From positions 1-64,000 of IMG/VR virus record IMGVR_UViG_3300021137_000001: 64,000 nt of DNA, one strand, 5' to 3'. Both the position numbers and the translations under genes were made by a program. Positions 35,602 to 45,977 of the stretch are shown one piece after another (the stretch's first letter is position 1; each line of letters begins with the position of its first letter). The notes beneath the pieces are model-generated. The model had not been told where the DNA came from. It did not search any database and saw nothing but the letters and a program-made list of their open reading frames with translations.

Positions 35602-36630
35602 ATGTCAAAAAACGTACTCGTAACGGGTGGCGCAGGTTTTGTAGCCCATCACGTTATTGAAAACTTACTTAGAAATACTGATTGGAATATTATCAGTCTT
35701 GATCGCTTAGATTTCTCAGGCAACTTAAATCGCCTTGCAGATATGATGGATCAATTTGATGCGACAACTAAAAAACGTGTACGGGTTGTGCATCACGATT
35801 TACGTGCAGAACTTAACTCAATGTTACAATATGATTTAGGTGATGTTAATCTTGTATTACACTTAGCGGCAGGTTCTCACGTTGATCGCAGTATTGCCGA
35901 TCCAATGAGCTTTGTGCTTGATAACGTTGTAGGTACTTGTAATATTCTAAACTATGCACGTACACTTCCTAACTTAGAACGCTTTATCTACTTCTCAACA
36001 GATGAGATCTTCGGCGCAGCTCCTCCTGGTATTAATTATGGTGAGCGCGACCGTTACAACTCAACTAACCCATACTCTGCTACTAAAGCAGGCGGTGAAG
36101 AACTTGCAGTTGCATACGAAAATACATATAAAATGCCAATCTTCATTACACACACGATGAACGTGTTTGGTGAAAGACAGCATCCAGAGAAATTTATCCC
36201 AATGTGTGTACGTAAAGTATTAGATGGTGACACAATTACTGTACATAGTGATGTTAGTCGCACAGTAGCAGGTAGTAGACATTATATCCATGCCGCAGAC
36301 GTTGCAGATGCAATGCACTTCTTGTTAAACTTAGATGATGCTAAACTTACTACTGACTTTGGCGGCGCCAAATGTCCTAAGTTCAACTTAGTAGGTAAAG
36401 AAGAAATCGATAATTTAACGCTTGCTAAAATTATTGCGCAAGTACAAGGCAAAGAACTAAAATACGAATTAGTGGATTGTCATAGTTCACGTCCAGGACA
36501 TGATTTACGTTATGCATTAAGTGGTGACTACATGCGCAGTTTAGGATGGGAACCAAAGTATTCATTAAGCCAACGTATTGGTGAAGTAGTTGAGTGGACA
36601 CTTGCAAATGAGAGATGGTTAAGATGCTAA
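35602..36630 (+). CDS. rfbB: dTDP-glucose 4,6-dehydratase-like (extended SDR)
   Basis: TGGAGFVA, LAAGSHVDRS, STDE, PYSATK, RPGHDLRYA; TAAATA at 35570. Confidence 0.88.
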   Translation: MSKNVLVTGGAGFVAHHVIENLLRNTDWNIISLDRLDFSGNLNRLADMMDQFDATTKKRVRVVHHDLRAELNSMLQYDLGDVNLVLHLAAGSHVDRSIADPMSFVLDNVVGTCNILNYARTLPNLERFIYFSTDEIFGAAPPGINYGERDRYNSTNPYSATKAGGEELAVAYENTYKMPIFITHTMNVFGERQHPEKFIPMCVRKVLDGDTITVHSDVSRTVAGSRHYIHAADVADAMHFLLNLDDAKLTTDFGGAKCPKFNLVGKEEIDNLTLAKIIAQVQGKELKYELVDCHSSRPGHDLRYALSGDYMRSLGWEPKYSLSQRIGEVVEWTLANERWLRC

Positions 36631-37286
36631 GAGATATATTTGATAATTTAGATTTACATTGCGGTAAATGGTCTGAGTACTTTGACATTTATGAACGACA
36701 TTTTGCAAAATATCAAAACAGAAAACCAGTTGTAGTCGAAGTTGGTATCTGTAGGGGCGGAAGTGCTGAGATGTGGAAGAAGTATTTTGGTACTGATGCT
36801 ACTATTGTCGGCATCGATGTTGATCCAGTGTCATTTGAACAACGCCATCAAACTGAAGGTTGCATACAAGTAAATGGCAATCAAGGTGACCCTGCATTTT
36901 GGCAAGAGTTTCTAAAAACATATCCGCAAATTGATGTGTTCTTAGACGATGGTGGTCATCATATGAGTCAACAGATTGTTACGTTGCAACAAGTATGGCC
37001 ACATATTGTTAATGGTGGTGTTTATATGTGTGAAGATACACATACTGCATACTGGCCAGAATATGGCGGCGGACTTAATAACCCACGTAGCTTTCTTGAA
37101 TATGCAAAACAAATTTCAGATACAATGAATGTTAATTACTATCGTGGCAATGACCGTCACCCTGATAATATTGCACTTGCTAAATTCTTTAAAGAACTAA
37201 CCGGCATGCATTTTTATGATAGCATTGTAGTAATGGACAAAAATGTCCGTAAAGAACAAATTCTTGTAACGAGTACACCAATATAA
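36615..37286 (+). CDS. SAM-dependent methyltransferase (Methyltransf_24-like)
   Basis: VEVGICRGGS, IDVFLDDGGH, GGVYMCED. Confidence 0.75.
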   Translation: MVKMLRDIFDNLDLHCGKWSEYFDIYERHFAKYQNRKPVVVEVGICRGGSAEMWKKYFGTDATIVGIDVDPVSFEQRHQTEGCIQVNGNQGDPAFWQEFLKTYPQIDVFLDDGGHHMSQQIVTLQQVWPHIVNGGVYMCEDTHTAYWPEYGGGLNNPRSFLEYAKQISDTMNVNYYRGNDRHPDNIALAKFFKELTGMHFYDSIVVMDKNVRKEQILVTSTPI

Positions 37287-38023
37287 TGAAAAACACAGTC
37301 CTAGTAACATCGGCAGTATATACTAACTATGGTATATACGATACTAAACAGCGTATACAACAAACATTAGATACCGTTAAAAGCGCACGTAAGTATATCC
37401 CAGATTGTACTATTATTCTAATTGACAATAGCACTACTGCAATTGCGCAAGACGACAGTACAGAACTAAATGAACTAATTGATATTGTTGATTACTATAT
37501 CGACAATAGTGATGACAAAGACATACAGCACTTCCATAACAATATTACTAATTACGACATTGGTAAGAACTCAATGGAGTGTATTGGTATGTACAAAGCA
37601 CTTGCTTACATGTCGTCTAATGCAGAGATAATGGATATTATTACAAGCTCATCACGCATATTTAAACTTAGTGGTCGTTATCAAGTTACTGATAAGTTTG
37701 ACATTACTAAGTTTGATAATGAAACAACTGTGGACAAATATGTGTTTAAGAAGGCACAAGCAAGTTGGATTGCAGAAGCTGATACCGGTGTAACTACATT
37801 GTTACAAACTCGTCTGTGGTCATTTACTCCGAGTTTGTTTGTTGATACAGTTCAGTTGTTTCAAAACATTCTAAAAAATATGTTTTCTACTATTAATAAC
37901 GGCAAGTACATTGATGTCGAGCATAGTATGGCTAAGTTCATTCCAGCAGACAAGTTAGTTGAACTCGACACAGTTGGATTAATTGGTAATATTGCTCCAA
38001 ACGGTATGGTAGTAGTTGATTAG
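37286..38023 (+). CDS. Glycosyltransferase-like hypothetical protein
   Basis: LIDNS and IFKLSGRY motifs; sugar-cluster context. Confidence 0.45.
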   Translation: MKNTVLVTSAVYTNYGIYDTKQRIQQTLDTVKSARKYIPDCTIILIDNSTTAIAQDDSTELNELIDIVDYYIDNSDDKDIQHFHNNITNYDIGKNSMECIGMYKALAYMSSNAEIMDIITSSSRIFKLSGRYQVTDKFDITKFDNETTVDKYVFKKAQASWIAEADTGVTTLLQTRLWSFTPSLFVDTVQLFQNILKNMFSTINNGKYIDVEHSMAKFIPADKLVELDTVGLIGNIAPNGMVVVD

Positions 38024-38024
38024 C

Positions 38025-39227
38025 ATGGAACACGCAAAAGAACTTAACGAATGTTTATGTTGTGGAAGTAAACAGTTGACATTGGTGATGGATTTAGGCG
38101 AGCAACCACTTGCTAATAGCTTTATCGACGATACTGCTATTCCTGAATATATATTTCCATTACAAGTAAATCTTTGTACGGATTGTACTCATTTGCAATT
38201 AAGTCATGCAGTAAATCCAGACTTAATGTTTAAAAATTATCTATATGTAAGTGGTACAAGCAAAACATTGCGTGACTACTTTGATAGTTTTGCTAAGTCG
38301 ACGTTGGATTATTTTACAACACCACCAACGACTATGTTAGATATTGCATGCAATGATGGTTCGCAATTGAATTCATTTAAAGCATTAGGATTAAAAACAT
38401 ACGGAATTGATCCTGCTCGTAACTTGTATATGTTAAGTAGTGCCAAACATGAAGTGGTTTGTGATTACTTTACGGAAGAATATGTAGAGCATTTTAAATC
38501 TAAACATATAGATATTATTAACGCACAAAATGTATTTGCGCATACAAGTTATCCGTTAGAGTTTTTAATGATGTGTAAAGAAATTATGCATGACAATAGT
38601 CGCTTGTTCTTACAAACAAGTCAGGCTAACATGGTGCACAATGATGAATTTGATACTGTGTACCATGAGCATTTAAGTTTCTTTAATGTTGCAAGTATGC
38701 AGGCACTAGCTATTCGTGCAGGGCTGTATTTAATTGATGTAGAGAAAACTCCAATTCACGGAATTAGTTATAAATTTGTGTTTGCTACAGTGCCAGACTT
38801 TAAGTCGGGAGTCGAACAACACCTGGCAGAAGAACGTGCATGGGGATTACAAGAGATTGATACGTACACTACGTGGGCAGAAAAATGTCAACAAGGGGTT
38901 GATGTACTTAAAGAAAAGATTAAGGAATATCGAGCTGAAGGATATGTAATCGCTGGCTATGGTGCCGCTGCAAAAGGTATGACATTACTCAACTTTGGTA
39001 ATATACAATTAGATTTTATCATTGACGATAATCCATTGAAACAAAATTTGTTTACGCCAGGTATGCATATTCCTGTAGTATCAATTGACATACTTAAAGA
39101 AGTTGAAGATATGAATGTAGCATTTATTCCGCTAGCATGGAATTTCTTTGATGAAATAAGTGCAAACATTCGGCTAGTACGTAATAAAGAAGGTGACGTA
39201 TTTCTTAAATACGCACCAGGTAACTAA
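38025..39227 (+). CDS. NDP-hexose C-methyltransferase-like protein
   Basis: N-terminal CxxC...DLGEQPLANSF...CxxC, DIACNDG, YHEHLSFF, GYGAAAKG, IDDNPLKQ. Confidence 0.8.
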   Translation: MEHAKELNECLCCGSKQLTLVMDLGEQPLANSFIDDTAIPEYIFPLQVNLCTDCTHLQLSHAVNPDLMFKNYLYVSGTSKTLRDYFDSFAKSTLDYFTTPPTTMLDIACNDGSQLNSFKALGLKTYGIDPARNLYMLSSAKHEVVCDYFTEEYVEHFKSKHIDIINAQNVFAHTSYPLEFLMMCKEIMHDNSRLFLQTSQANMVHNDEFDTVYHEHLSFFNVASMQALAIRAGLYLIDVEKTPIHGISYKFVFATVPDFKSGVEQHLAEERAWGLQEIDTYTTWAEKCQQGVDVLKEKIKEYRAEGYVIAGYGAAAKGMTLLNFGNIQLDFIIDDNPLKQNLFTPGMHIPVVSIDILKEVEDMNVAFIPLAWNFFDEISANIRLVRNKEGDVFLKYAPGN

Positions 39228-39228
39228 T

Positions 39229-40008
39229 ATGAAGAAAACAGTTGTTTGTACTTTTTATAATGAAGAATATATATTACCGTGGTTTTTAAAACATAATCGT
39301 GAAGTGTTCGACCATGGCGTTATGATTGACTATCACAGCACCGACAGAAGTAGAGAAATTATTAAAGAACTATGCCCAACTTGGGATATAGTAATGAGTC
39401 GAAACTTTGATTTCCAAGCCGATAAAGTAGATCGAGAAATAATGGATGTTGAGAACCAATTTGATGGTTGGAAGATGTGCCTTAACGCAACTGAATTGTT
39501 AGTAGGTGATTATTCTATATTAGGTGATCAACCTGGGCAATTTCTTGTGCCAAGTGTGTTTATGGTTGATTGCGATAAAGAACGACTAGTTACACATGAT
39601 CTTCCTTTATATGAACAAAAGACTTTTGGATTTACATTTGATACACAGCAAAACTTTTTAGAACGACGGGCTCGCAGCATACATAGTATACCTGTGCAAT
39701 ACGCACTTCAATCTACAGTTGAGTGTATGGGTCCGGGAAGACATTTTAACAAGTACACAACGGATAAGTTAGCAGTATTTTATTACGGTTGGGCTCCATT
39801 GGATGAACAGGGTATGAAACGTAAGTTACAAATCCAAACACAAACTCCTTTACATGATAGACAACGCGGATGGGGATTTCATCACATAACAAACAAAGAA
39901 ACAGTCGAGTATAGATTAGAAAATGAATTTATACCACGCAGTCGAGACTTAACACAGGAAATTGCAAAATATGTCACTAAACATAAAAATCTTTCAAATA
40001 TACTTTAA
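39229..40008 (+). CDS. GT-A-fold glycosyltransferase (family 2-like)
   Basis: FYNEEYILPWFLKH, IDYHSTD. Confidence 0.7.
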   Translation: MKKTVVCTFYNEEYILPWFLKHNREVFDHGVMIDYHSTDRSREIIKELCPTWDIVMSRNFDFQADKVDREIMDVENQFDGWKMCLNATELLVGDYSILGDQPGQFLVPSVFMVDCDKERLVTHDLPLYEQKTFGFTFDTQQNFLERRARSIHSIPVQYALQSTVECMGPGRHFNKYTTDKLAVFYYGWAPLDEQGMKRKLQIQTQTPLHDRQRGWGFHHITNKETVEYRLENEFIPRSRDLTQEIAKYVTKHKNLSNIL

Positions 40009-40804
40009 GCCAGAACAAGTTGCAACGTTAGATCCAGCATTTACTCCACTTGATAACACAGTAAACCTTAAACCAGAGTTGCGCGAGTGGGCAATATGGG
40101 AACAGGAATATGAACGTATATGTGCAGAAGGATTGGACTACTGGGGCTTTGTATCTTGGAAGTTTAAAGAGAAAACAAATCTAAGCGGTGAACAGTTACT
40201 GGCTTTTATTACTGATAATCCCGGTGCTGACTTATACTTTGTTAACCCATGCTTAGTAAATGAAGCGTTATTTGCTAACAGTTGGGAACAAGGCGATATA
40301 CACCACCCTAACATCTCTGCAATTGGCAACAGCTTTCTAACTAAGATCGGTTACGAAGATGTTGATGTACGCAGTATGGTACTTGATCGTAACTGTACTA
40401 TGTTTGCTAACTACATTGTTGGTAGTAGAGCATTCTGGGATAAGTTTATGACATTTACACGTCGACTATTTACAGAAGCAGAAAAAGACCCTGTGTTCAA
40501 ACAGCAAGTATTTGGTGAGGGTATGAGTAACTATGCGCATGATAAAACTCTACCTAACTTTACATTTTTAATTGAACGCTTAATCCCAACGTTTATTGAT
40601 CTTGAGAAGATTTCTGCACTTGCATACCAATACACGCCAGAAACTATACTTGAAAAATATCAGCCATATTTAGGCGAGTTACGAGCATTATCGAACCTAA
40701 AAGTACTCATAAATCAGTATAATAGTGATGATTTGTACGACATTTGGAACCATTATAGACATAGCCTACTACAGCGTCACCCTGGGATATTGGGGTTAGA
40801 ATGA
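39962..40804 (+). CDS. Glycosyltransferase-like hypothetical protein
   Basis: DYWGFVSWKF, ANYIVG and IERL motifs; context. Confidence 0.45.
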   Translation: MQNMSLNIKIFQIYFKPEQVATLDPAFTPLDNTVNLKPELREWAIWEQEYERICAEGLDYWGFVSWKFKEKTNLSGEQLLAFITDNPGADLYFVNPCLVNEALFANSWEQGDIHHPNISAIGNSFLTKIGYEDVDVRSMVLDRNCTMFANYIVGSRAFWDKFMTFTRRLFTEAEKDPVFKQQVFGEGMSNYAHDKTLPNFTFLIERLIPTFIDLEKISALAYQYTPETILEKYQPYLGELRALSNLKVLINQYNSDDLYDIWNHYRHSLLQRHPGILGLE

Positions 40805-41453
40805 GTTTAACTAGTAAAAAAATTATTAAGATCGAGCCAATAAATCCGACATTTTCGATAACTTGGTTTTTAGGATTAAGATGTAACTTTGATTGTATGT
40901 ATTGCCCTGACAAATATCATAATTTAACTGATAAGGATCTGACATTAGCTGAATTGCAACATAAATGGGAGATAATTTTTGCAAAAACACAAAAGCGTGG
41001 ATTAAAATATAAATTAGCATTCACTGGCGGTGAAGTTACTGCTAATAAAAATTTCCTACCTTTCTTACAATGGCTTGATACAAATTATAAGGAATATATT
41101 TCCGAAACAGGATTCACTACAAATGGATCCGCTAGTAAACAATATTACTTAACTGCAATATCAATTGATATAATTTCATTTATTAGTTTTTCAACGCACA
41201 GTGAATTTTTTAATGAACATAAATTTTTTGATACAATAATAGCAGTTCATCGAATAGCAACAATGATCCGTAAAAGTATACATGTTAATGTTATGAATGA
41301 ATATTAGAGCACTGAAAAATCTACAATATATTGCAACTTTTTAAAAGAGAAAAAATCAATCATAGTCTTAATGAAATCGAATACAGTCTTAAAATTAGAG
41401 ATACTATAAAACTTAATCCTAATAAAAAGGAGTTTAATTTTGACAGTCAATGA
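40801..41453 (+). pseudogene. Radical SAM gene, probably degraded (premature TAG plus frameshift)
   Basis: CNFDCMYC and FTGGE; TAG at 41305-41307; protein-like continuation switches frame at the A6 run (41350-41355) and ends at TGA 41451-41453. Confidence 0.55.
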
Positions 41454-42084: not shown

Positions 42085-42600
42085 ATGAGCAGTTTCGTCT
42101 ACTCAAAAATAGCATTCATGGCCATTATGTCATTAGTTATAATTACTGCCAACGCAGAAGAAGCAATATCAGTCGCAACACAAAAACAATTAACTTGTTT
42201 AGCACAAAACATCTACCACGAAGCCGGAAACGAAAGTTTAGCTGGCAAAGTAGCAGTGGCTCAAGTAACAATCAATCGCGCTAAAAGCGGAGACTTCCCA
42301 CGTACAATATGTGGTGTAGTTAATCAAAAAATAGTAATAGCAGATAAAACAATATGTCAGTTCTCGTGGGTATGCGATCCGCTTGCTCACGGACAACGCA
42401 TATATTCTGCAGCATGGAAAGAAAGCTACACAATAGCACAAAACGTATTGTTCGAAGGACTACGCATTGAGTCATTGGGTACAGAAGCATTGTACTTTCA
42501 TAATGCATCTGCCAACCCACGATGGGGACTTGCAAAACTTGATCGCATTGGCGGGCATACATTTTACAGCGCAGACAAAGTAAAAGTAGCAGCCAGATAA
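42085..42600 (+). CDS. Cell wall hydrolase (SleB/Hydrolase_2 family)
   Basis: CLAQNIYHEA, VAQVTINR, QFSW, YFH, IGGHTFY; N-terminal signal. Confidence 0.85.
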   Translation: MSSFVYSKIAFMAIMSLVIITANAEEAISVATQKQLTCLAQNIYHEAGNESLAGKVAVAQVTINRAKSGDFPRTICGVVNQKIVIADKTICQFSWVCDPLAHGQRIYSAAWKESYTIAQNVLFEGLRIESLGTEALYFHNASANPRWGLAKLDRIGGHTFYSADKVKVAAR

Positions 42601-43320: not shown

Positions 43321-43650
43321 TTATAGATTATCTGGCCAGTCACGATATAATGCATGTTGGATATTGCCTTTAACAAACTGATTAAAACTTCTATGTTTAG
43401 ATTCTAGTTCACCTTCTAACGGAGCAACACGTTTAAACGCATTGTCCAGTTGCGCCATATCTTTAAATTCCATCATAATATGCCACTCTGGAATATCCAG
43501 GCTTCGAAATCCCATCTTACAACGTGTAATACGATAGCTAACTAATTTATCCTCGTTAACTAAATGTTGTAAAAATCCTTTCATATTATTGACCCAGTCT
43601 AAATCACTGATGTCGCCTTCTTTGTCTGCCCATATATGATAAATGTCCAT
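43321..43650 (-). CDS. DUF6614-like small protein
   Basis: YHIW, RCKMGFRS and PEWHIMMEF motifs (family recalled from memory, unverified). Confidence 0.5.
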   Translation of the reverse strand: MDIYHIWADKEGDISDLDWVNNMKGFLQHLVNEDKLVSYRITRCKMGFRSLDIPEWHIMMEFKDMAQLDNAFKRVAPLEGELESKHRSFNQFVKGNIQHALYRDWPDNL

Positions 43651-43651
43651 C

Positions 43652-44803
43652 TTAACTCCTCTCCGGAAAATAGTCTTTTATTGTACCTTCTCTATGCAAG
43701 TCACTTGTAATACAATGGAGGCCGCCATCCCAAAAATATCTATGTCGAAAATTGACAACATGAGGAGTAATTCCGTGCCGAACAAATGCCTCAAATACAT
43801 GTTCATTGTAATTATTACACACTACATTATGCTCATCTATAACCAACATATTGACATCAAATACAGTTTCTTCTACATAACCAACCCAATGCCCTAACCA
43901 TTGCTCGACAAAATCAGTAAATTCATCATTTAGTTCTTCTCCCGGAACCCACCACTTACCATAATTTTTTTCTTTAAGATCTAAAAATGGTTTAACAGCC
44001 GCCCAACTTTGACCTGGTAAATAAACAACTTCCCAGTCTGGGAATGTTTCGGCATACGTCGGAACATCCCTCAGACTTATAATCAGTCCTGGTTTAACCG
44101 GACAGTATGTGCTATCCATGTGTCCACCAGTATTAATAACACGGCACCGGTATTCTGAGAAAAAATTACTATATTTTTTTTTAATTTCTAATAGATCATC
44201 ATTGTAATTTTCAGTGCCAAAATATAAATCTCGACCAACTCTGGTAGTCATAGCACGGTTCAACAGTGCTGGTCCCGATCCGTCTGACATCGGTTGTTCA
44301 CTTATTATATTTCCTTGTGCGGATATTTTTTGAAATATATGGTTGTATTCTTGTGAAATAGTCACCCGATGTTTATTAATAATTGACTGTACTTCTTGTT
44401 TAATAATATCGGGTAATATATTATATTCATCTACAGTAGATATTTTTGGCCAATCATCTGCTGCAATACTTTGATATACCTGCACCTCGGTGCACCAATT
44501 ATGATAAAAAGTTTCACCAATCATAACTGAAAAATCACATGGAGTCATTGGTGGGGGTAGATATCTCCCATCCTTTAAATATACACTAAAATCTTCATTA
44601 ATTATAGGTCTGAGTACTTCGACCCCAAATGATTCTAATAGAATGATTAATTTTTGATAATCTTCTTCTGTTTCGACGGCAATGCGTTCCATAACAGAAC
44701 GCACACGTATATTTTTAATAAATGAATAAAATTCAGGAGGATAGCTACGTCCTACTATGCAGACCTTAAGTGGATCCCAATGTTGATAAACTGAATATGT
44801 CAT
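43652..44803 (-). CDS. Amidinotransferase (glycine/inosamine amidinotransferase superfamily)
   Basis: WDPLKVCIVG, GHMD, RHRYFWDGGLHCITSDLHR. Confidence 0.8.
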   Translation of the reverse strand: MTYSVYQHWDPLKVCIVGRSYPPEFYSFIKNIRVRSVMERIAVETEEDYQKLIILLESFGVEVLRPIINEDFSVYLKDGRYLPPPMTPCDFSVMIGETFYHNWCTEVQVYQSIAADDWPKISTVDEYNILPDIIKQEVQSIINKHRVTISQEYNHIFQKISAQGNIISEQPMSDGSGPALLNRAMTTRVGRDLYFGTENYNDDLLEIKKKYSNFFSEYRCRVINTGGHMDSTYCPVKPGLIISLRDVPTYAETFPDWEVVYLPGQSWAAVKPFLDLKEKNYGKWWVPGEELNDEFTDFVEQWLGHWVGYVEETVFDVNMLVIDEHNVVCNNYNEHVFEAFVRHGITPHVVNFRHRYFWDGGLHCITSDLHREGTIKDYFPERS

Positions 44804-45228
44804 TCTAATTTTCCTAATAATTCAAACCCGGAGATAGTTTGTTTGTATTCATCTGCTCCGCCCATATACAAATAAGTAAATCCTAATGCTTTGTATATAG
44901 CACACTCATTCTTTAAACTTTCTATTCCTAATCGCAATTTAGGATTATCATAATCCCATGCAAACTGTAAACTTTCAGCATTATTAACATCGTATTTTTT
45001 AACTAAACTAAATGCTATTAATTGACCCTGATTATGATATCCGATTATGTCAGTATTACTATCTAAATATTGTTGATTAAAAATTGGCATTACGCTACTA
45101 AACTTTTTATACTCGCAGTACTTGCGATAAATGAGATTTAATTCTGATATATCAGGGTTGCGGATATATTGCCAGTTGGTTGATGTTGTATAATTGGTTT
45201 TTGCCAGATTTATTCTTGCGTATTTCAT
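44800..45228 (-). CDS. GNAT protein resembling the C-domain of aminoacyl-tRNA-protein transferases (ATE1/Bpt-like)
   Basis: LIAFSLV...WDYDNPKLRLG...E...ALGFTYLYMG resembles the YDP...SLG...YxYLG pattern. Confidence 0.55.
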   Translation of the reverse strand: MKYARINLAKTNYTTSTNWQYIRNPDISELNLIYRKYCEYKKFSSVMPIFNQQYLDSNTDIIGYHNQGQLIAFSLVKKYDVNNAESLQFAWDYDNPKLRLGIESLKNECAIYKALGFTYLYMGGADEYKQTISGFELLGKLE

Positions 45229-45232
45229 TAAA

Positions 45233-45727
45233 TTACTTATGGCGCCACGTTACTACTTCGTCTAACTCTGATTGACTCCATGTATCATAATATCCCTTAG
45301 CACGAATTTGATCAGACGCCGCAGTTAATTTACTCAACGGAGAGATTACAAATAATCCACATTGCCCAAAGTTCATATTAACCCCTGCAATATATTCTTT
45401 TACATCTGGGTGGTCTTCTAATAGAACATAATCATTTTGCATAATGTTAGCATTCAATTCTAATGCTAACTGTTGGCAATCTTCACCAGAGATTAGTGTA
45501 TGGTCAAAGCATATAACTGCTACGTCATACTGTCCGAACATAGTTAAACTTTCGTTGACAGTTTTGGTTAAGTCTGCTATACTACTTTCGATTATAAGGA
45601 TTTTATTGTTTATGCGAGCTTGTCTTGCATACAGGCAAGGCGGCCAATTATTTAATGCAGGATTTGGTTTCTCTACAAATGACGTCAACCATTCGATTAA
45701 TTGAGTCTTTATTAAATTGAAGTTCAT
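45233..45727 (-). CDS. Hypothetical protein (DUF1415-like N-terminus)
   Basis: W...V...PPCLYARQA; first gene after the minus-strand TAAATA (45733-45738). Confidence 0.5.
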   Translation of the reverse strand: MNFNLIKTQLIEWLTSFVEKPNPALNNWPPCLYARQARINNKILIIESSIADLTKTVNESLTMFGQYDVAVICFDHTLISGEDCQQLALELNANIMQNDYVLLEDHPDVKEYIAGVNMNFGQCGLFVISPLSKLTAASDQIRAKGYYDTWSQSELDEVVTWRHK

Positions 45728-45751
45728 ACTACTATTTAAGGTAGATTTAGG

Positions 45752-45812: not shown

Positions 45813-45977
45813 ATGACTAAACTTATTATTATTTTTATCTGCCTTAATTTAACTGCTTGCGGGTGGGACCAGAAGAAATGTGTAGATGGAAAGTTATACC
45901 ACAAGCCCTACGGAAATGGACCGTACCTACTCGAAAACGGTATCACTTGCCTACCTGAAGATAAGGAAACAAAATGA
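45813..45977 (+). CDS. Small lipoprotein (54 aa)
   Basis: MTK plus hydrophobic stretch and lipobox LTA|C; AAGGAG RBS; translated by hand. Confidence 0.65.
   Translation: MTKLIIIFICLNLTACGWDQKKCVDGKLYHKPYGNGPYLLENGITCLPEDKETK

What the first reader, a model, noticed from the sequence alone, without database searches (positions are those of the whole stretch)
43321..45738. Counter-oriented late four-gene operon: amidinotransferase, aminoacyl-tRNA-transferase-like GNAT and two unknowns
Seen: four tightly packed minus-strand genes (gaps of 4 nt or less, or overlap) behind one TAAATA. The amidinotransferase keeps His/Asp (GHMD) and the catalytic Cys (GGLHC), but the segment aligning with DAAD of glycine amidinotransferase reads NRAM (alignment from memory). 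Established: amidinotransferases move the amidino group of Arg; ATE1/Bpt transfer amino acids from tRNA to proteins. Inference: an Arg-centred modification or small-molecule pathway that I cannot match to a described phage system.
Basis: partly seen in the sequence, partly recalled or inferred. Interest (0 to 1): 0.7.

Follow-up and report, generated by a model that had tools for sequence, protein, structure and literature searches.

The report
Phage heme-oxygenase, tRNA-transferase, amidinotransferase operon
A freshwater jumbo phage carries a four-gene operon, recurrent in uncultured phages, that pairs a probable heme-thiolate oxygenase with an aminoacyl-tRNA transferase, an arginine amidinotransferase and a small barrel protein, and it points to an undescribed phage pathway for arginine/guanidine chemistry.

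Summary
Four minus-strand genes (164, 142, 383 and 109 aa) are packed with a 4-nt gap, a 4-nt overlap and a 1-nt gap. They sit 5 nt behind a TAAATA motif that is about 8-fold enriched upstream of genes in this 329-kb freshwater phage.

- **383-aa protein:** an AGAT/StrB1-family amidinotransferase. It keeps Cys, His and two Asp, but has Asn where AGAT has Asp254; 37 of 48 family members do the same.
- **142-aa protein:** an ATE_C/Bpt-type GNAT, not an ordinary acetyltransferase.
- **164-aa "unknown":** a virus-dominated branch of the thiolate-heme "sandwich" fold (DUF6875/cytochrome P422, DUF1415). Its only clear PDB match is AglA, a guanidine N-hydroxylase.
- **109-aa "unknown":** DUF6614, a Dabb/EthD-like barrel.

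The genes co-occur in many unrelated phage contexts, but the hub is the heme-like protein, not the amidinotransferase. Of 80 loci anchored on it, 77 carry the GNAT, 47 carry DUF6614, 31 carry the amidinotransferase and 18 carry all four. One natural heme-protein::amidinotransferase fusion exists.

My best reading is inferred, not shown: the module installs a guanidine by arginyl or amidino transfer and then N-oxygenates it, as AglC/AglA do in argolaphos biosynthesis. The target is unknown. No description of such a phage system was found.

The parts
45733..45738 (-). TAAATA promoter-like motif (context cTTAAATAgtagtATG), 5 nt upstream of the first start codon
   Evidence: Sequence. Genome-wide upstream enrichment and the 5-nt spacing class. 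gp55-like sigma factor. Late timing is inferred by analogy with T4 and was not measured.
45233..45727 (-). A164: member of a virus-dominated family with the thiolate-heme 'sandwich' fold (related to DUF6875/cytochrome P422, DUF1415 and YqcI/YcgG AglA). Cys31 is invariant in the family. It is the hub of the module.
   Evidence: AF2 model with pLDDT 95. VIA wide search of the PDB: AglA 9ub3_A at Z 8.1 over 143 residues, next hit Z 4.4. Foldseek against AFDB clusters: DUF6875/DUF1415 at probability 1.0. 18 of 31 family members hit Pfam DUF6875. Invariant C31 within PCP[YF]A. PHROGs 28122 and 10325.
44800..45228 (-). B142: single-domain ATE_C/Bpt-type GNAT, a probable aminoacyl-tRNA-dependent aminoacyl transferase that lacks the ATE_N domain
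   Evidence: Pfam ATE_C at 5.5e-5, 24.2 bits against a cut-off of 25. 21 of 29 family members hit ATE_C, best 2e-9, and none hits another GNAT family. AF2 model with pLDDT 95. Top PDB matches are ATE1, A-PGS/L-PGS and MprF. All top 30 Swiss-Prot models are Bpt, TM 0.69-0.79, aligning from Bpt residues 61-74 onward.
43652..44803 (-). AT383: AGAT/StrB1-family amidinotransferase (pentein fold). It has Cys364, His228, Asp230 and Asp90, and Asn182 in place of AGAT Asp254. This copy also has Cys89 where 47 of 48 relatives have Arg.
   Evidence: phmmer against the PDB: AGAT 3e-10, HsvA, SxtG, StrB1. Family profile against AGAT 1.5e-31 and StrB1 1.8e-29. Column counts.
43321..43650 (-). D109: DUF6614, a small dimeric alpha/beta-barrel-like (Dabb/EthD/DUF1330-like) protein. 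It is the most conserved of the four.
   Evidence: Pfam DUF6614 at 2.7e-25. In the Atlas, a family member's model matches DUF1330, EthD, Dabb and NIPSNAP models. Alignment with 71% mean column identity and invariant Y4, R40, T42, R43, K45, GFRS47-50, E55, E61, H86, H99, R103, D104.

Best explanation
The operon is a phage tailoring module for arginine/guanidine chemistry, built around a small thiolate-heme monooxygenase (A164).

Proposed steps, all inferred:
1. A guanidine group is put onto an amine acceptor in one of two ways. B142 transfers an aminoacyl group, most plausibly arginyl, from host-charged tRNA, as AglC does for aminomethylphosphonate. AT383 transfers the amidino group of free arginine through a Cys364 amidino-thioester.
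2. A164 takes electrons from a host ferredoxin or reductase and uses O2 to N-hydroxylate (or otherwise oxygenate) that guanidine or the appended residue.
3. D109 acts as an accessory or finishing protein, much as EthD is needed beside a P450.

The acceptor is not known. I favour a small amine or an amino-sugar/peptide-like metabolite over a protein. The operon is probably transcribed late from the TAAATA motif.

Shown here: the family and fold of each protein, which catalytic residues are retained, the genetic linkage and one gene fusion. Inferred: heme binding, every substrate, the order of steps and the timing.
For: A164 fold:
- The only PDB structure well above background is AglA, a Cys-ligated heme guanidine N-hydroxylase (Foldseek hits; PMC12866846 sections 4 and 6).
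- AFDB and Pfam link the family to DUF6875 (cytochrome P422, a Cys-ligated heme hydroxylase) and to DUF1415 (bioRxiv 10.64898/2025.12.11.692455).
- The family's single invariant Cys sits in the N-terminal stretch that matches those HMMs.

Precedent: AglA's substrate AMPn-Arg is prepared with AglC plus ArgRS and tRNA. A tRNA-dependent arginyl transferase working with a heme guanidine N-hydroxylase is therefore a known biosynthetic pair.

B142 is ATE/Bpt-like.

AT383 is a bona fide AGAT-family enzyme with its nucleophile and His/Asp residues intact.

Linkage:
- A-anchored loci: B in 77 of 80, D in 47, AT in 31, all four in 18.
- B-anchored loci: A in 42 of 43.
- AT-anchored loci with full flanks: A in 25 of 38.
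- Gene order varies and flanks are unrelated.
- One natural A164::AT fusion, P0348, sits next to a free A164 and a B142.
- In T4-like marine phages the same slot upstream of gp25 holds either A+AT or B+c7+A. This fits AT and B being alternative ways to feed A.

The phage carries tRNA-Arg(UCU).
Against: - No biochemical or expression data exist, and the heme co-folding job was not run by the tool.
- A164 lacks every published P422 motif (RxGxVCP, SBR1-3: 0 of 31). The window copy even reads CL instead of the family's CP.
- A164 has no sequence-level match to YqcI/YcgG or to any PDB chain.
- The tool states that Z around 8 is near the usual best score for models without clear relatives.
- Characterised ATE_C-family enzymes modify protein N-termini, not small molecules, and Bpt transfers Leu rather than Arg, so the amino acid moved is a guess.
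- AT383 lacks the Asp254 triad residue.
- AT occurs without A in about half of its loci. Distant A164 relatives in cultured phages (S-PM2, HMO-2011) stand alone beside structural genes.
- No ferredoxin or ArgRS is encoded by the phage.
Confidence: 0.38

Rival explanations
1. The module modifies proteins, most likely virion proteins. B142 adds an amino acid to a protein N-terminus as Bpt/ATE1 do. A164 hydroxylates or oxidises a side chain or an N-terminal residue, comparable to oxidation before arginylation in the N-degron pathway. AT383 amidinates lysine or remodels arginine residues. D109 is an adaptor or is itself the substrate.
For: - The nearest family of B142 acts on protein N-termini.
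- In T4-like phages the module sits inside the baseplate gene block, next to gp25, gp6 or the baseplate hub. In HMO-2011 the A164 homologue sits beside a virion structural protein.
- The promoter is of the late type.
- In cyanophage contexts AT neighbours are P4H-type 2OG-Fe(II) oxygenases and GT25 glycosyltransferases, a collagen-type modification set.
- A distant AT homologue was detected in the S-SCSM2R virion proteome (PMC12801897).
- All 15 aligned D109 sequences start Met-Asp or Met-Asn.
Against: - All characterised AGAT-family enzymes, and all characterised members of the thiolate-heme sandwich fold, act on free amino acids or small molecules.
- No conserved candidate substrate gene travels with the module apart from D109.
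- Methionine aminopeptidase does not normally expose Asp or Asn (my own knowledge).
- The virion-proteome hit is a distant paralogue that covers 41% of the query.
Confidence: 0.27
2. The module tailors a sugar or glycan. The amidinotransferase guanidinylates an amino sugar or aminocyclitol, as StrB1 does. The other enzymes decorate it, giving a modified surface glycan, a virion glycan or a DNA-linked sugar.
For: - StrB1 is among the closest solved relatives.
- A sugar-nucleotide cluster lies 2-8 kb away in the window.
- In relatives L086 and L087 the module directly follows a UDP-Glc/GDP-Man dehydrogenase-like gene and a second AT paralogue. That block sits at 134-139 kb in this genome.
- The S-SCSM2R AT homologue lies among KdsA/KdsB and glycosyltransferases.
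- GT25 genes flank AT in several loci.
Against: - Most of the module loci examined have no sugar genes nearby.
- The sugar association mainly concerns the shorter, Asp-retaining AT paralogue, not AT383.
- It does not explain the near-obligate A+B pair.
Confidence: 0.15
3. A164 is not an enzyme. It is a heme- or redox-sensing partner, via its Cys-Pro motif, that regulates the truncated ATE-like transferase. It would stand in for the cofactor-binding ATE_N domain, which is missing from B142.
For: - B142 lacks ATE_N.
- A and B are almost always adjacent.
- A Cys-Pro dipeptide is conserved in 30 of 31 family members.
- ATE1's N-terminal domain is reported to bind hemin or an Fe-S cluster (my own knowledge, not checked here).
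Against: - Loci with long B forms that carry an ATE_N-like extension still keep A164.
- A164 is also fused to, or adjacent to, AT without B.
- Its whole-domain fold match is to catalytic hydroxylases.
Confidence: 0.08
4. The four genes are unrelated neighbours that happen to share a transcript.
For: AT occurs without the other three genes in about half of AT-anchored loci, and distant A164 relatives stand alone in cultured phages.
Against: The genes co-occur across many unrelated flanking contexts with shuffled gene order, B is present in 77 of 80 A-anchored loci, and an A::AT fusion exists.
Confidence: 0.03

Closest known systems
Argolaphos AglC/AglA pair (Streptomyces monomycini)
   Same: It combines an aminoacyl-tRNA-dependent arginyl transfer onto an amine with a small Cys-ligated heme 'sandwich-fold' enzyme that N-hydroxylates the guanidine. 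AglA is the one solved structure that clearly matches A164.
   Different: It belongs to a bacterial phosphonate gene cluster, not a phage. I could not check AglC's family. AglA belongs to YqcI/YcgG, to which A164 shows no sequence match. The pair includes no amidinotransferase and no DUF6614 protein.
Cytochrome P422 (DUF6875) tryptophan hydroxylases
   Same: This is the nearest Pfam family to A164 relatives. It shares the same kind of alpha/beta sandwich and an N-terminal Cys(-Pro) heme ligand.
   Different: The P422 heme-binding motif RxGxVCP and the three Trp-binding motifs are absent from all 31 A164-family members. A164 is shorter, viral, and linked to guanidine and aminoacyl enzymes rather than to tryptophan genes.
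L-arginine:glycine amidinotransferase (AGAT), StrB1, HsvA, SxtG
   Same: There is full-length homology, and the equivalents of Cys407, His303, Asp305 and Asp170 are conserved.
   Different: The Asp254 equivalent is Asn in the window copy and in 37 of 48 relatives. The family is almost confined to viruses: 12 loci in 185,579 species genomes, all of them MAGs. The acceptor is unknown.
Bpt (Asp/Glu leucyltransferase) and ATE1 arginyltransferase
   Same: They share the ATE_C-type GNAT domain and the C-terminal Y-K-x3-G-F/Y-E motif region. They are the best fold matches.
   Different: B142 is only 142 aa, has no ATE_N domain, and aligns from Bpt residues 61-74 onward. Neither the amino acid transferred nor the acceptor is known.
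D-cycloserine DcsA/DcsB, and EthD beside P450 EthB
   Same: In DcsA/DcsB, a YqcI/YcgG-family enzyme grouped with the heme guanidine N-hydroxylases works with a second enzyme that processes the guanidino group. In EthD/EthB, a small Dabb-like protein is required beside a thiolate-heme monooxygenase. The pathway details and the EthD role come from my own knowledge.
   Different: DcsB is an arginase-fold hydrolase, not a pentein. EthD's role is itself unknown. D109 resembles EthD only at the fold level, and that was seen via a relative's model.

Membership tests
AGAT-family amidinotransferase (pentein fold) | Significant full-length sequence similarity to AGAT/StrB1 | tested here: met
   The family profile scores 1.5e-31 against AGAT and 1.8e-29 against StrB1. 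The single protein scores 3e-10. No Pfam model reaches threshold for this copy.
AGAT-family amidinotransferase (pentein fold) | Catalytic Cys nucleophile (AGAT Cys407) and His303/Asp305, plus Asp170 | tested here: met
   C364 is conserved in 47 of 48, H228 in 48 of 48, D230 in 48 of 48 and D90 in 47 of 48.
AGAT-family amidinotransferase (pentein fold) | Triad Asp (AGAT Asp254) | tested here: not met
   The window copy has N182. The family column reads N 37, S 5, P 3, D 1, G 1, Q 1. The single Asp belongs to L010:1241-2155, a short (~304-aa) AT copy.
AGAT-family amidinotransferase (pentein fold) | Arginine-dependent amidino transfer | not testable with these tools
   This needs an enzyme assay.
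ATE/Bpt aminoacyl-tRNA-protein transferases | ATE_C (PF04377) domain | tested here: inconclusive
   The window copy scores 24.2 bits against a cut-off of 25. 21 of 29 family members match, best 2e-9, and no other GNAT family matches.
ATE/Bpt aminoacyl-tRNA-protein transferases | GNAT fold closest to aminoacyl-tRNA transferases rather than to acetyl-CoA enzymes | tested here: met
   The top PDB matches are ATE1, A-PGS/L-PGS and MprF. All top 30 Swiss-Prot models are Bpt. Acetyl- and myristoyl-transferases also appear lower in the list.
ATE/Bpt aminoacyl-tRNA-protein transferases | ATE_N domain | tested here: not met
   B142 starts where Bpt residues 61-74 align. Only the longer relatives (L044, L048, L057, L069) carry an N-terminal extension.
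ATE/Bpt aminoacyl-tRNA-protein transferases | Use of aminoacyl-tRNA as donor, and a protein N-terminus as acceptor | not testable with these tools
   This needs an assay.
Cytochrome P422 (DUF6875) | Pfam DUF6875 match | tested here: inconclusive
   The window copy has no hit. 18 of 31 relatives hit at E up to 1, best 9.2e-5. Where scores were shown they fell below the 24.5-bit cut-off: 17.3 and 21.3 bits.
Cytochrome P422 (DUF6875) | Heme-binding motif RxGxVCP and substrate motifs SBR1-3 | tested here: not met
   Each motif is found in 0 of 31 members. Only the Cys-Pro dipeptide is kept (30 of 31), and the window copy reads Cys-Leu.
Cytochrome P422 (DUF6875) | Same fold | tested here: met
   AFDB cluster representatives named DUF6875 or DUF1415 match at probability 1.0 and TM 0.46-0.66 by query.
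YqcI/YcgG guanidine N-hydroxylases (AglA) | Fold: four-stranded sheet sandwiched by helices, with an N-terminal Cys heme ligand | tested here: inconclusive
   AglA scores Z 8.1 over 143 residues, and the next hit scores 4.4. The model has 4 strands plus helices. An invariant Cys31 exists, but no residue-level superposition was available.
YqcI/YcgG guanidine N-hydroxylases (AglA) | Sequence membership | tested here: not met
   The A164 family profile finds no AglA chain in the PDB sequence search even at E 10. No YqcI/YcgG family appears in the Pfam scans.
Any heme protein | Binds heme | not testable with these tools
Spectroscopy is needed.
DUF6614 | Pfam match above the gathering score | tested here: met
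   89.1 bits against a cut-off of 25, covering residues 1-108.

The most novel reading that the evidence does not exclude
Environmental phages (freshwater jumbo phages and marine T4-like phages) carry a family of miniature thiolate-heme oxygenases that is so far unrecognised. Each is almost always paired with a stripped-down aminoacyl-tRNA transferase. Together with an Asn-variant amidinotransferase, which is fused to the oxygenase in one case, they would make an N-hydroxyguanidine-type product during late infection. That product could be a new phage-made effector such as an NO donor or antimetabolite. It could instead be built on the ultra-conserved DUF6614 protein, whose N-terminus is always Met-Asp or Met-Asn, as a scaffold or substrate. 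Either way this would be the first virus-encoded tRNA-dependent, heme-dependent amino-acid tailoring pathway.
Probability: 0.25. Interest if true: 0.9.

Novelty: new variant of a known kind. Interest (0 to 1): 0.72.

Why it matters
If the reading is right, phages carry their own oxidative arginine/guanidine tailoring chemistry. Until now that chemistry has been known only from bacterial antibiotic gene clusters (argolaphos, D-cycloserine, guanitoxin, miharamycin).

The gene families involved are large. The heme-like family has 1,163 clusters at 50% identity. The ATE-like protein's Atlas cluster has about 3,700 members, 99% of them viral. Assigning them a function would annotate a sizeable block of viral dark matter, including 'hypothetical' genes in model cyanophages such as S-PM2 p080.

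It would also add three things: a third branch to the newly recognised non-P450 thiolate-heme enzymes, a natural Asn variant of the amidinotransferase triad, and a minimal ATE-type transferase that works without ATE_N.

Tried and rejected
- **Nucleotide search:** megablast of the region against GenBank phages found nothing.
- **tblastn against cultured phages:** AT383 found only 4 records. B142 found none.
- **A164 against PDB sequences:** the family profile gave only noise.
- **Heme co-folding of A164:** the tool accepted the job but did not fold it. It is no evidence either way.
- **Kin genomes:** relatives cannot be drawn for a virus record.
- **B-family alignment:** too variable for a pattern scan, so the single protein was used instead.
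- **DUF6614 as an anti-Druantia gene (Druad1):** rejected. Druad1 is a 44-aa protein whose DUF6614 label is only a prediction and cannot be a full 116-position domain.
- **Expression data:** no RNA run holding the locus was listed.
- **Phage-encoded helpers:** no Fer2 ferredoxin and no arginyl-tRNA synthetase is encoded.
- **Cellular homologues of the AT family:** only 12 MAG contigs. The Bdellovibrio-like ones place an A-like gene plus AT among radical-SAM/SPASM and PP-loop genes. This is suggestive but was not followed further.
- **ORF-based HMM counts for B-anchored loci:** these undercounted A164 because my ORF caller used ATG starts only. The tblastn counts are the ones to trust.
- **Original argolaphos paper (PMC9284158):** not held, so AglC's protein family could not be checked.
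Full report
**Setting.** The window is the first 64 kb of a 329,321-bp virus record with direct terminal repeats, estimated complete. The same sequence recurs in at least 15 freshwater, lake and sediment metagenome runs from 2012-2016. The phage has 13 tRNA genes, including tRNA-Arg(UCU), and a gp55-like late sigma factor. About 80% of its genes lie on the plus strand, so the four genes studied here really are counter-oriented.

**Observation.** Four minus-strand ORFs occupy 43321-45727:
- A164: 45233-45727
- B142: 44800-45228
- AT383: 43652-44803
- D109: 43321-43650

The junctions are a 4-nt gap, a 4-nt ATGA overlap and a 1-nt gap. TAAATA lies at 45733-45738, 5 nt before the first ATG. This hexamer is a real signal in this genome:
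- It occurs in the 40 nt upstream of 80 of 357 called genes, against 2.65% of random 40-mers.
- ATAAATA is the most enriched upstream 7-mer (61 observed, 2.7 expected).
- The motif sits either 5 nt or 18-24 nt from the ATG. The operon belongs to the 5-nt class but reads TTAAATA, one mismatch from the best form.

'Late' is therefore a reasonable inference by analogy with T4. It has not been measured, and no RNA run holding the locus was listed.

**The amidinotransferase (AT383).** phmmer finds AGAT, HsvA, SxtG and StrB1. A 48-member family profile scores 1.5e-31 against AGAT and 1.8e-29 against StrB1.
- The equivalents of AGAT Asp170, His303, Asp305 and Cys407 are D90, H228, D230 and C364. They are conserved in 47-48 of 48 sequences.
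The Asp254 equivalent is Asn in the window copy and in 37 of 48 relatives (Ser 5, Pro 3, Asp 1). This is a family trait, not a lesion.
- The window copy also has Cys89 where 47 of 48 relatives have Arg.
- The family is essentially viral. There are at least 191 loci in IMG/VR but only 12 in 185,579 species genomes, all on MAG contigs.

**The GNAT (B142).**
- Pfam ATE_C scores just under its cut-off for this copy (24.2 against 25 bits). 21 of 29 family members match ATE_C (best 2e-9), and none matches any acetyltransferase family.
- The AF2 model (pLDDT 95) is closest to ATE1, to alanyl- and lysyl-phosphatidylglycerol synthases, and to MprF in the PDB. All top 30 Swiss-Prot models are Bpt, with TM 0.69-0.79.
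- B142 corresponds only to the C-terminal GNAT half, aligning from Bpt residues 61-74 onward. A few longer relatives carry an N-terminal extension.

B142 is therefore not an ordinary acetyltransferase. It is a minimal member of this family, and its donor amino acid and acceptor are unknown.

**The first 'unknown' (A164).** Neither Pfam nor PDB sequence searches hit the window copy, but several lines converge:
- 18 of 31 relatives give DUF6875 hits at E up to 1, best 9.2e-5. Where scores were shown they fell below the cut-off, and a few relatives also hit DUF1415.
- The AF2 model (pLDDT 95) matches AFDB clusters named DUF6875 and DUF1415 at probability 1.0.
- An exhaustive structural comparison with 48,161 PDB chains gives one outlier: AglA, at Z 8.1 over 143 of 164 residues. 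The next hit scores 4.4 (Foldseek also lists AglA).

DUF6875 was recently renamed cytochrome P422. It is a Cys-ligated b-heme family that hydroxylates tryptophan. AglA is the prototype of the YqcI/YcgG Cys-ligated heme enzymes that N-hydroxylate guanidines in argolaphos, D-cycloserine, guanitoxin and miharamycin biosynthesis. It has a four-stranded sheet sandwiched by helices and an N-terminal Cys ligand.

A164 has that architecture. It also has a single invariant Cys (C31, family motif PCP[YF]A) inside the stretch that matches the DUF6875/DUF1415 models. It is not a canonical P422, because the published heme-binding and Trp-binding motifs are absent from all 31 family members. Heme binding is inferred. 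The tool would not fold a heme complex.

**The second 'unknown' (D109).** This is Pfam DUF6614 (2.7e-25). A relative's model resembles DUF1330, EthD, Dabb and NIPSNAP barrels. It is the most conserved of the four proteins, at 72-89% identity where the others are 45-65%. It has a set of invariant charged and His/Tyr residues.

**Linkage.** Three anchored scans of IMG/VR gave these counts.

| Anchor | Loci | A164 | B142 | D109 | AT | All four |
|---|---|---|---|---|---|---|
| AT (all) | 80 | 40 | 25 | 16 | - | - |
| AT (non-redundant, 2.5 kb or more each side) | 38 | 25 | 16 | 10 | - | - |
| B142 | 43 | 42 | - | 18 | 8 | - |
| A164 (best 80 of at least 542) | 80 | - | 77 | 47 | 31 | 18 |

- Flanking genes differ between lineages, and gene order varies: A-B-AT-D, A-B-D-AT, A-AT-B-D, AT-A and B-x-A.
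- One protein, P0348, is a natural A164::AT fusion. On its contig it follows a free A164 and a B142.
- In T4-like marine phages the slot upstream of gp25/gp6 holds either A+AT or B+c7+A.
- In these samples D was found only where B was, and B almost only where A was.

So A164 is the hub, A+B is the core, and AT is a frequent but optional addition. A close relative (L085) has A, B and D at 90-98% identity but an AT at only 59%, which is a cassette swap inside the operon.

**Mechanism.** The best-supported reading combines three facts:
- A164's one clear structural relative hydroxylates guanidines.
- The substrate of that relative is made with a tRNA-dependent arginyl transferase, AglC, plus ArgRS and tRNA.
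- AT383 moves the guanidino carbon of arginine.

Arginyl transfer and amidino transfer are both ways of placing a guanidine on an amine. That would explain why B and AT can replace each other, or coexist, next to A. I therefore propose 'install a guanidine, then N-oxygenate it', with D109 as an accessory protein.

Everything beyond family assignment and genetic linkage is inference. The acceptor is unknown, and so are the amino acid that B142 transfers and the reaction that A164 performs. The phage encodes no ferredoxin and no ArgRS, so host partners would be needed.

**Rivals.**
- **Protein modification** is a serious alternative. ATE/Bpt enzymes act on protein N-termini. The module sits among baseplate genes in T4-like phages. 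AT neighbours in cyanophage-type loci include P4H-type 2OG oxygenases and GT25 glycosyltransferases. A distant AT homologue was found in a cyanophage virion proteome.
- **Sugar or glycan tailoring** is suggested by three observations. A sugar-nucleotide cluster lies nearby. A second, shorter AT paralogue that retains the Asp sits beside a UDP-Glc/GDP-Man dehydrogenase-like gene at 134-139 kb, and in relatives L086 and L087 that block directly precedes the module. The S-SCSM2R homologue lies in a KdsA/KdsB context.
- **A purely regulatory role for A164**, or **chance neighbourhood**, are much less likely.

**Comparison with what is known.** Searches of the paper library found no account of a phage amidinotransferase/ATE/heme module. 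A comparative review of jumbo phages mentions none of these families. A164 homologues in cultured phages (S-PM2 p080, Syn1, S-RIM44, S-RIM32, S-H9-2, S-SCSM2R, HMO-2011 gp66, CRP-345) are all annotated as hypothetical.

The module works like the AglC/AglA pair but is not a member of those families. It is best described as a new, virus-borne variant of a known biosynthetic logic, built from divergent members of four superfamilies.

**Verdict.** The function remains hypothetical but is directly testable.

Noticed in passing
window 35602-41307 (+): A sugar-nucleotide tailoring cluster lies 2-8 kb from the operon. It comprises a GDP-mannose 4,6-dehydratase/epimerase-like gene, two methyltransferases, a C-methyltransferase with a zinc-binding N-domain, a GT2-like gene and a small radical-SAM protein.
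   Followed up: partly
genome G000:C1:134198-138889 (locus L126:3199-7890), outside the window: A second, shorter amidinotransferase paralogue (304 aa) lies beside a UDP-Glc/GDP-Man dehydrogenase-like gene and three unknowns. In relatives L086 and L087 this block sits immediately upstream of A-B-AT-D plus a third AT copy.
   Followed up: partly
whole genome; in the window e.g. upstream of 8528, 14985, 23558, 33077: ATAAATA is the dominant upstream motif (61 observed, 2.7 expected). Its spacing to the start codon falls into two classes, 5 nt and 18-24 nt. The 5-nt class implies near-leaderless late transcripts. A gp55-like sigma factor lies near 306.1 kb.
   Followed up: partly
L139:3778-5496 (protein P0348): A natural fusion of an A164-like domain with the amidinotransferase (572 aa). 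It is preceded by a free A164 and a B142. The fused A domain has lost the LEDHP and NxG motifs but keeps CPYA.
   Followed up: yes
L085 (IMGVR_UViG_3300034071_001431): A close relative has A, B and D at 90-98% identity, but its amidinotransferase is only 59% identical to any sampled copy. This is an allele or cassette replacement inside the operon.
   Followed up: no
L102-L121, e.g. L102:1313-1969: In T4-like marine phages a 218-aa protein (phrog_3704, labelled 'ferredoxin' in PHROGs, no convincing Pfam hit) always sits between B142 and A164. It could be a redox partner or another pathway enzyme. It is absent from this genome.
   Followed up: partly
L132 and L136 (Pseudobdellovibrionaceae/Bdellovibrio MAG contigs): Distant A164-like plus AT pairs lie among several radical-SAM/SPASM genes and PP-loop (QueC/NAD-synthase-like) ATPases. 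This is a possible cellular gene cluster related to the phage module.
   Followed up: partly
window 42085-42600 (+) and 45813-45977 (+): A Hydrolase_2 (SleB-like) cell-wall hydrolase and a 54-aa ORF flank the operon. The hydrolase's N-terminus looks like a signal peptide, and the short ORF has a lipobox-like LTAC (my reading of the translations).
   Followed up: no
window 43652-44803, residue 89: The window's amidinotransferase has Cys in the P-R-D motif, next to the Asp170 equivalent, where 47 of 48 relatives have Arg.
   Followed up: no
NC_006820.1 26205-26669 (S-PM2p080) and NC_021864.1 gp66: Cultured phages carry stand-alone A164 homologues next to baseplate or virion structural genes, all annotated as hypothetical. 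They would be convenient experimental entry points.
   Followed up: partly
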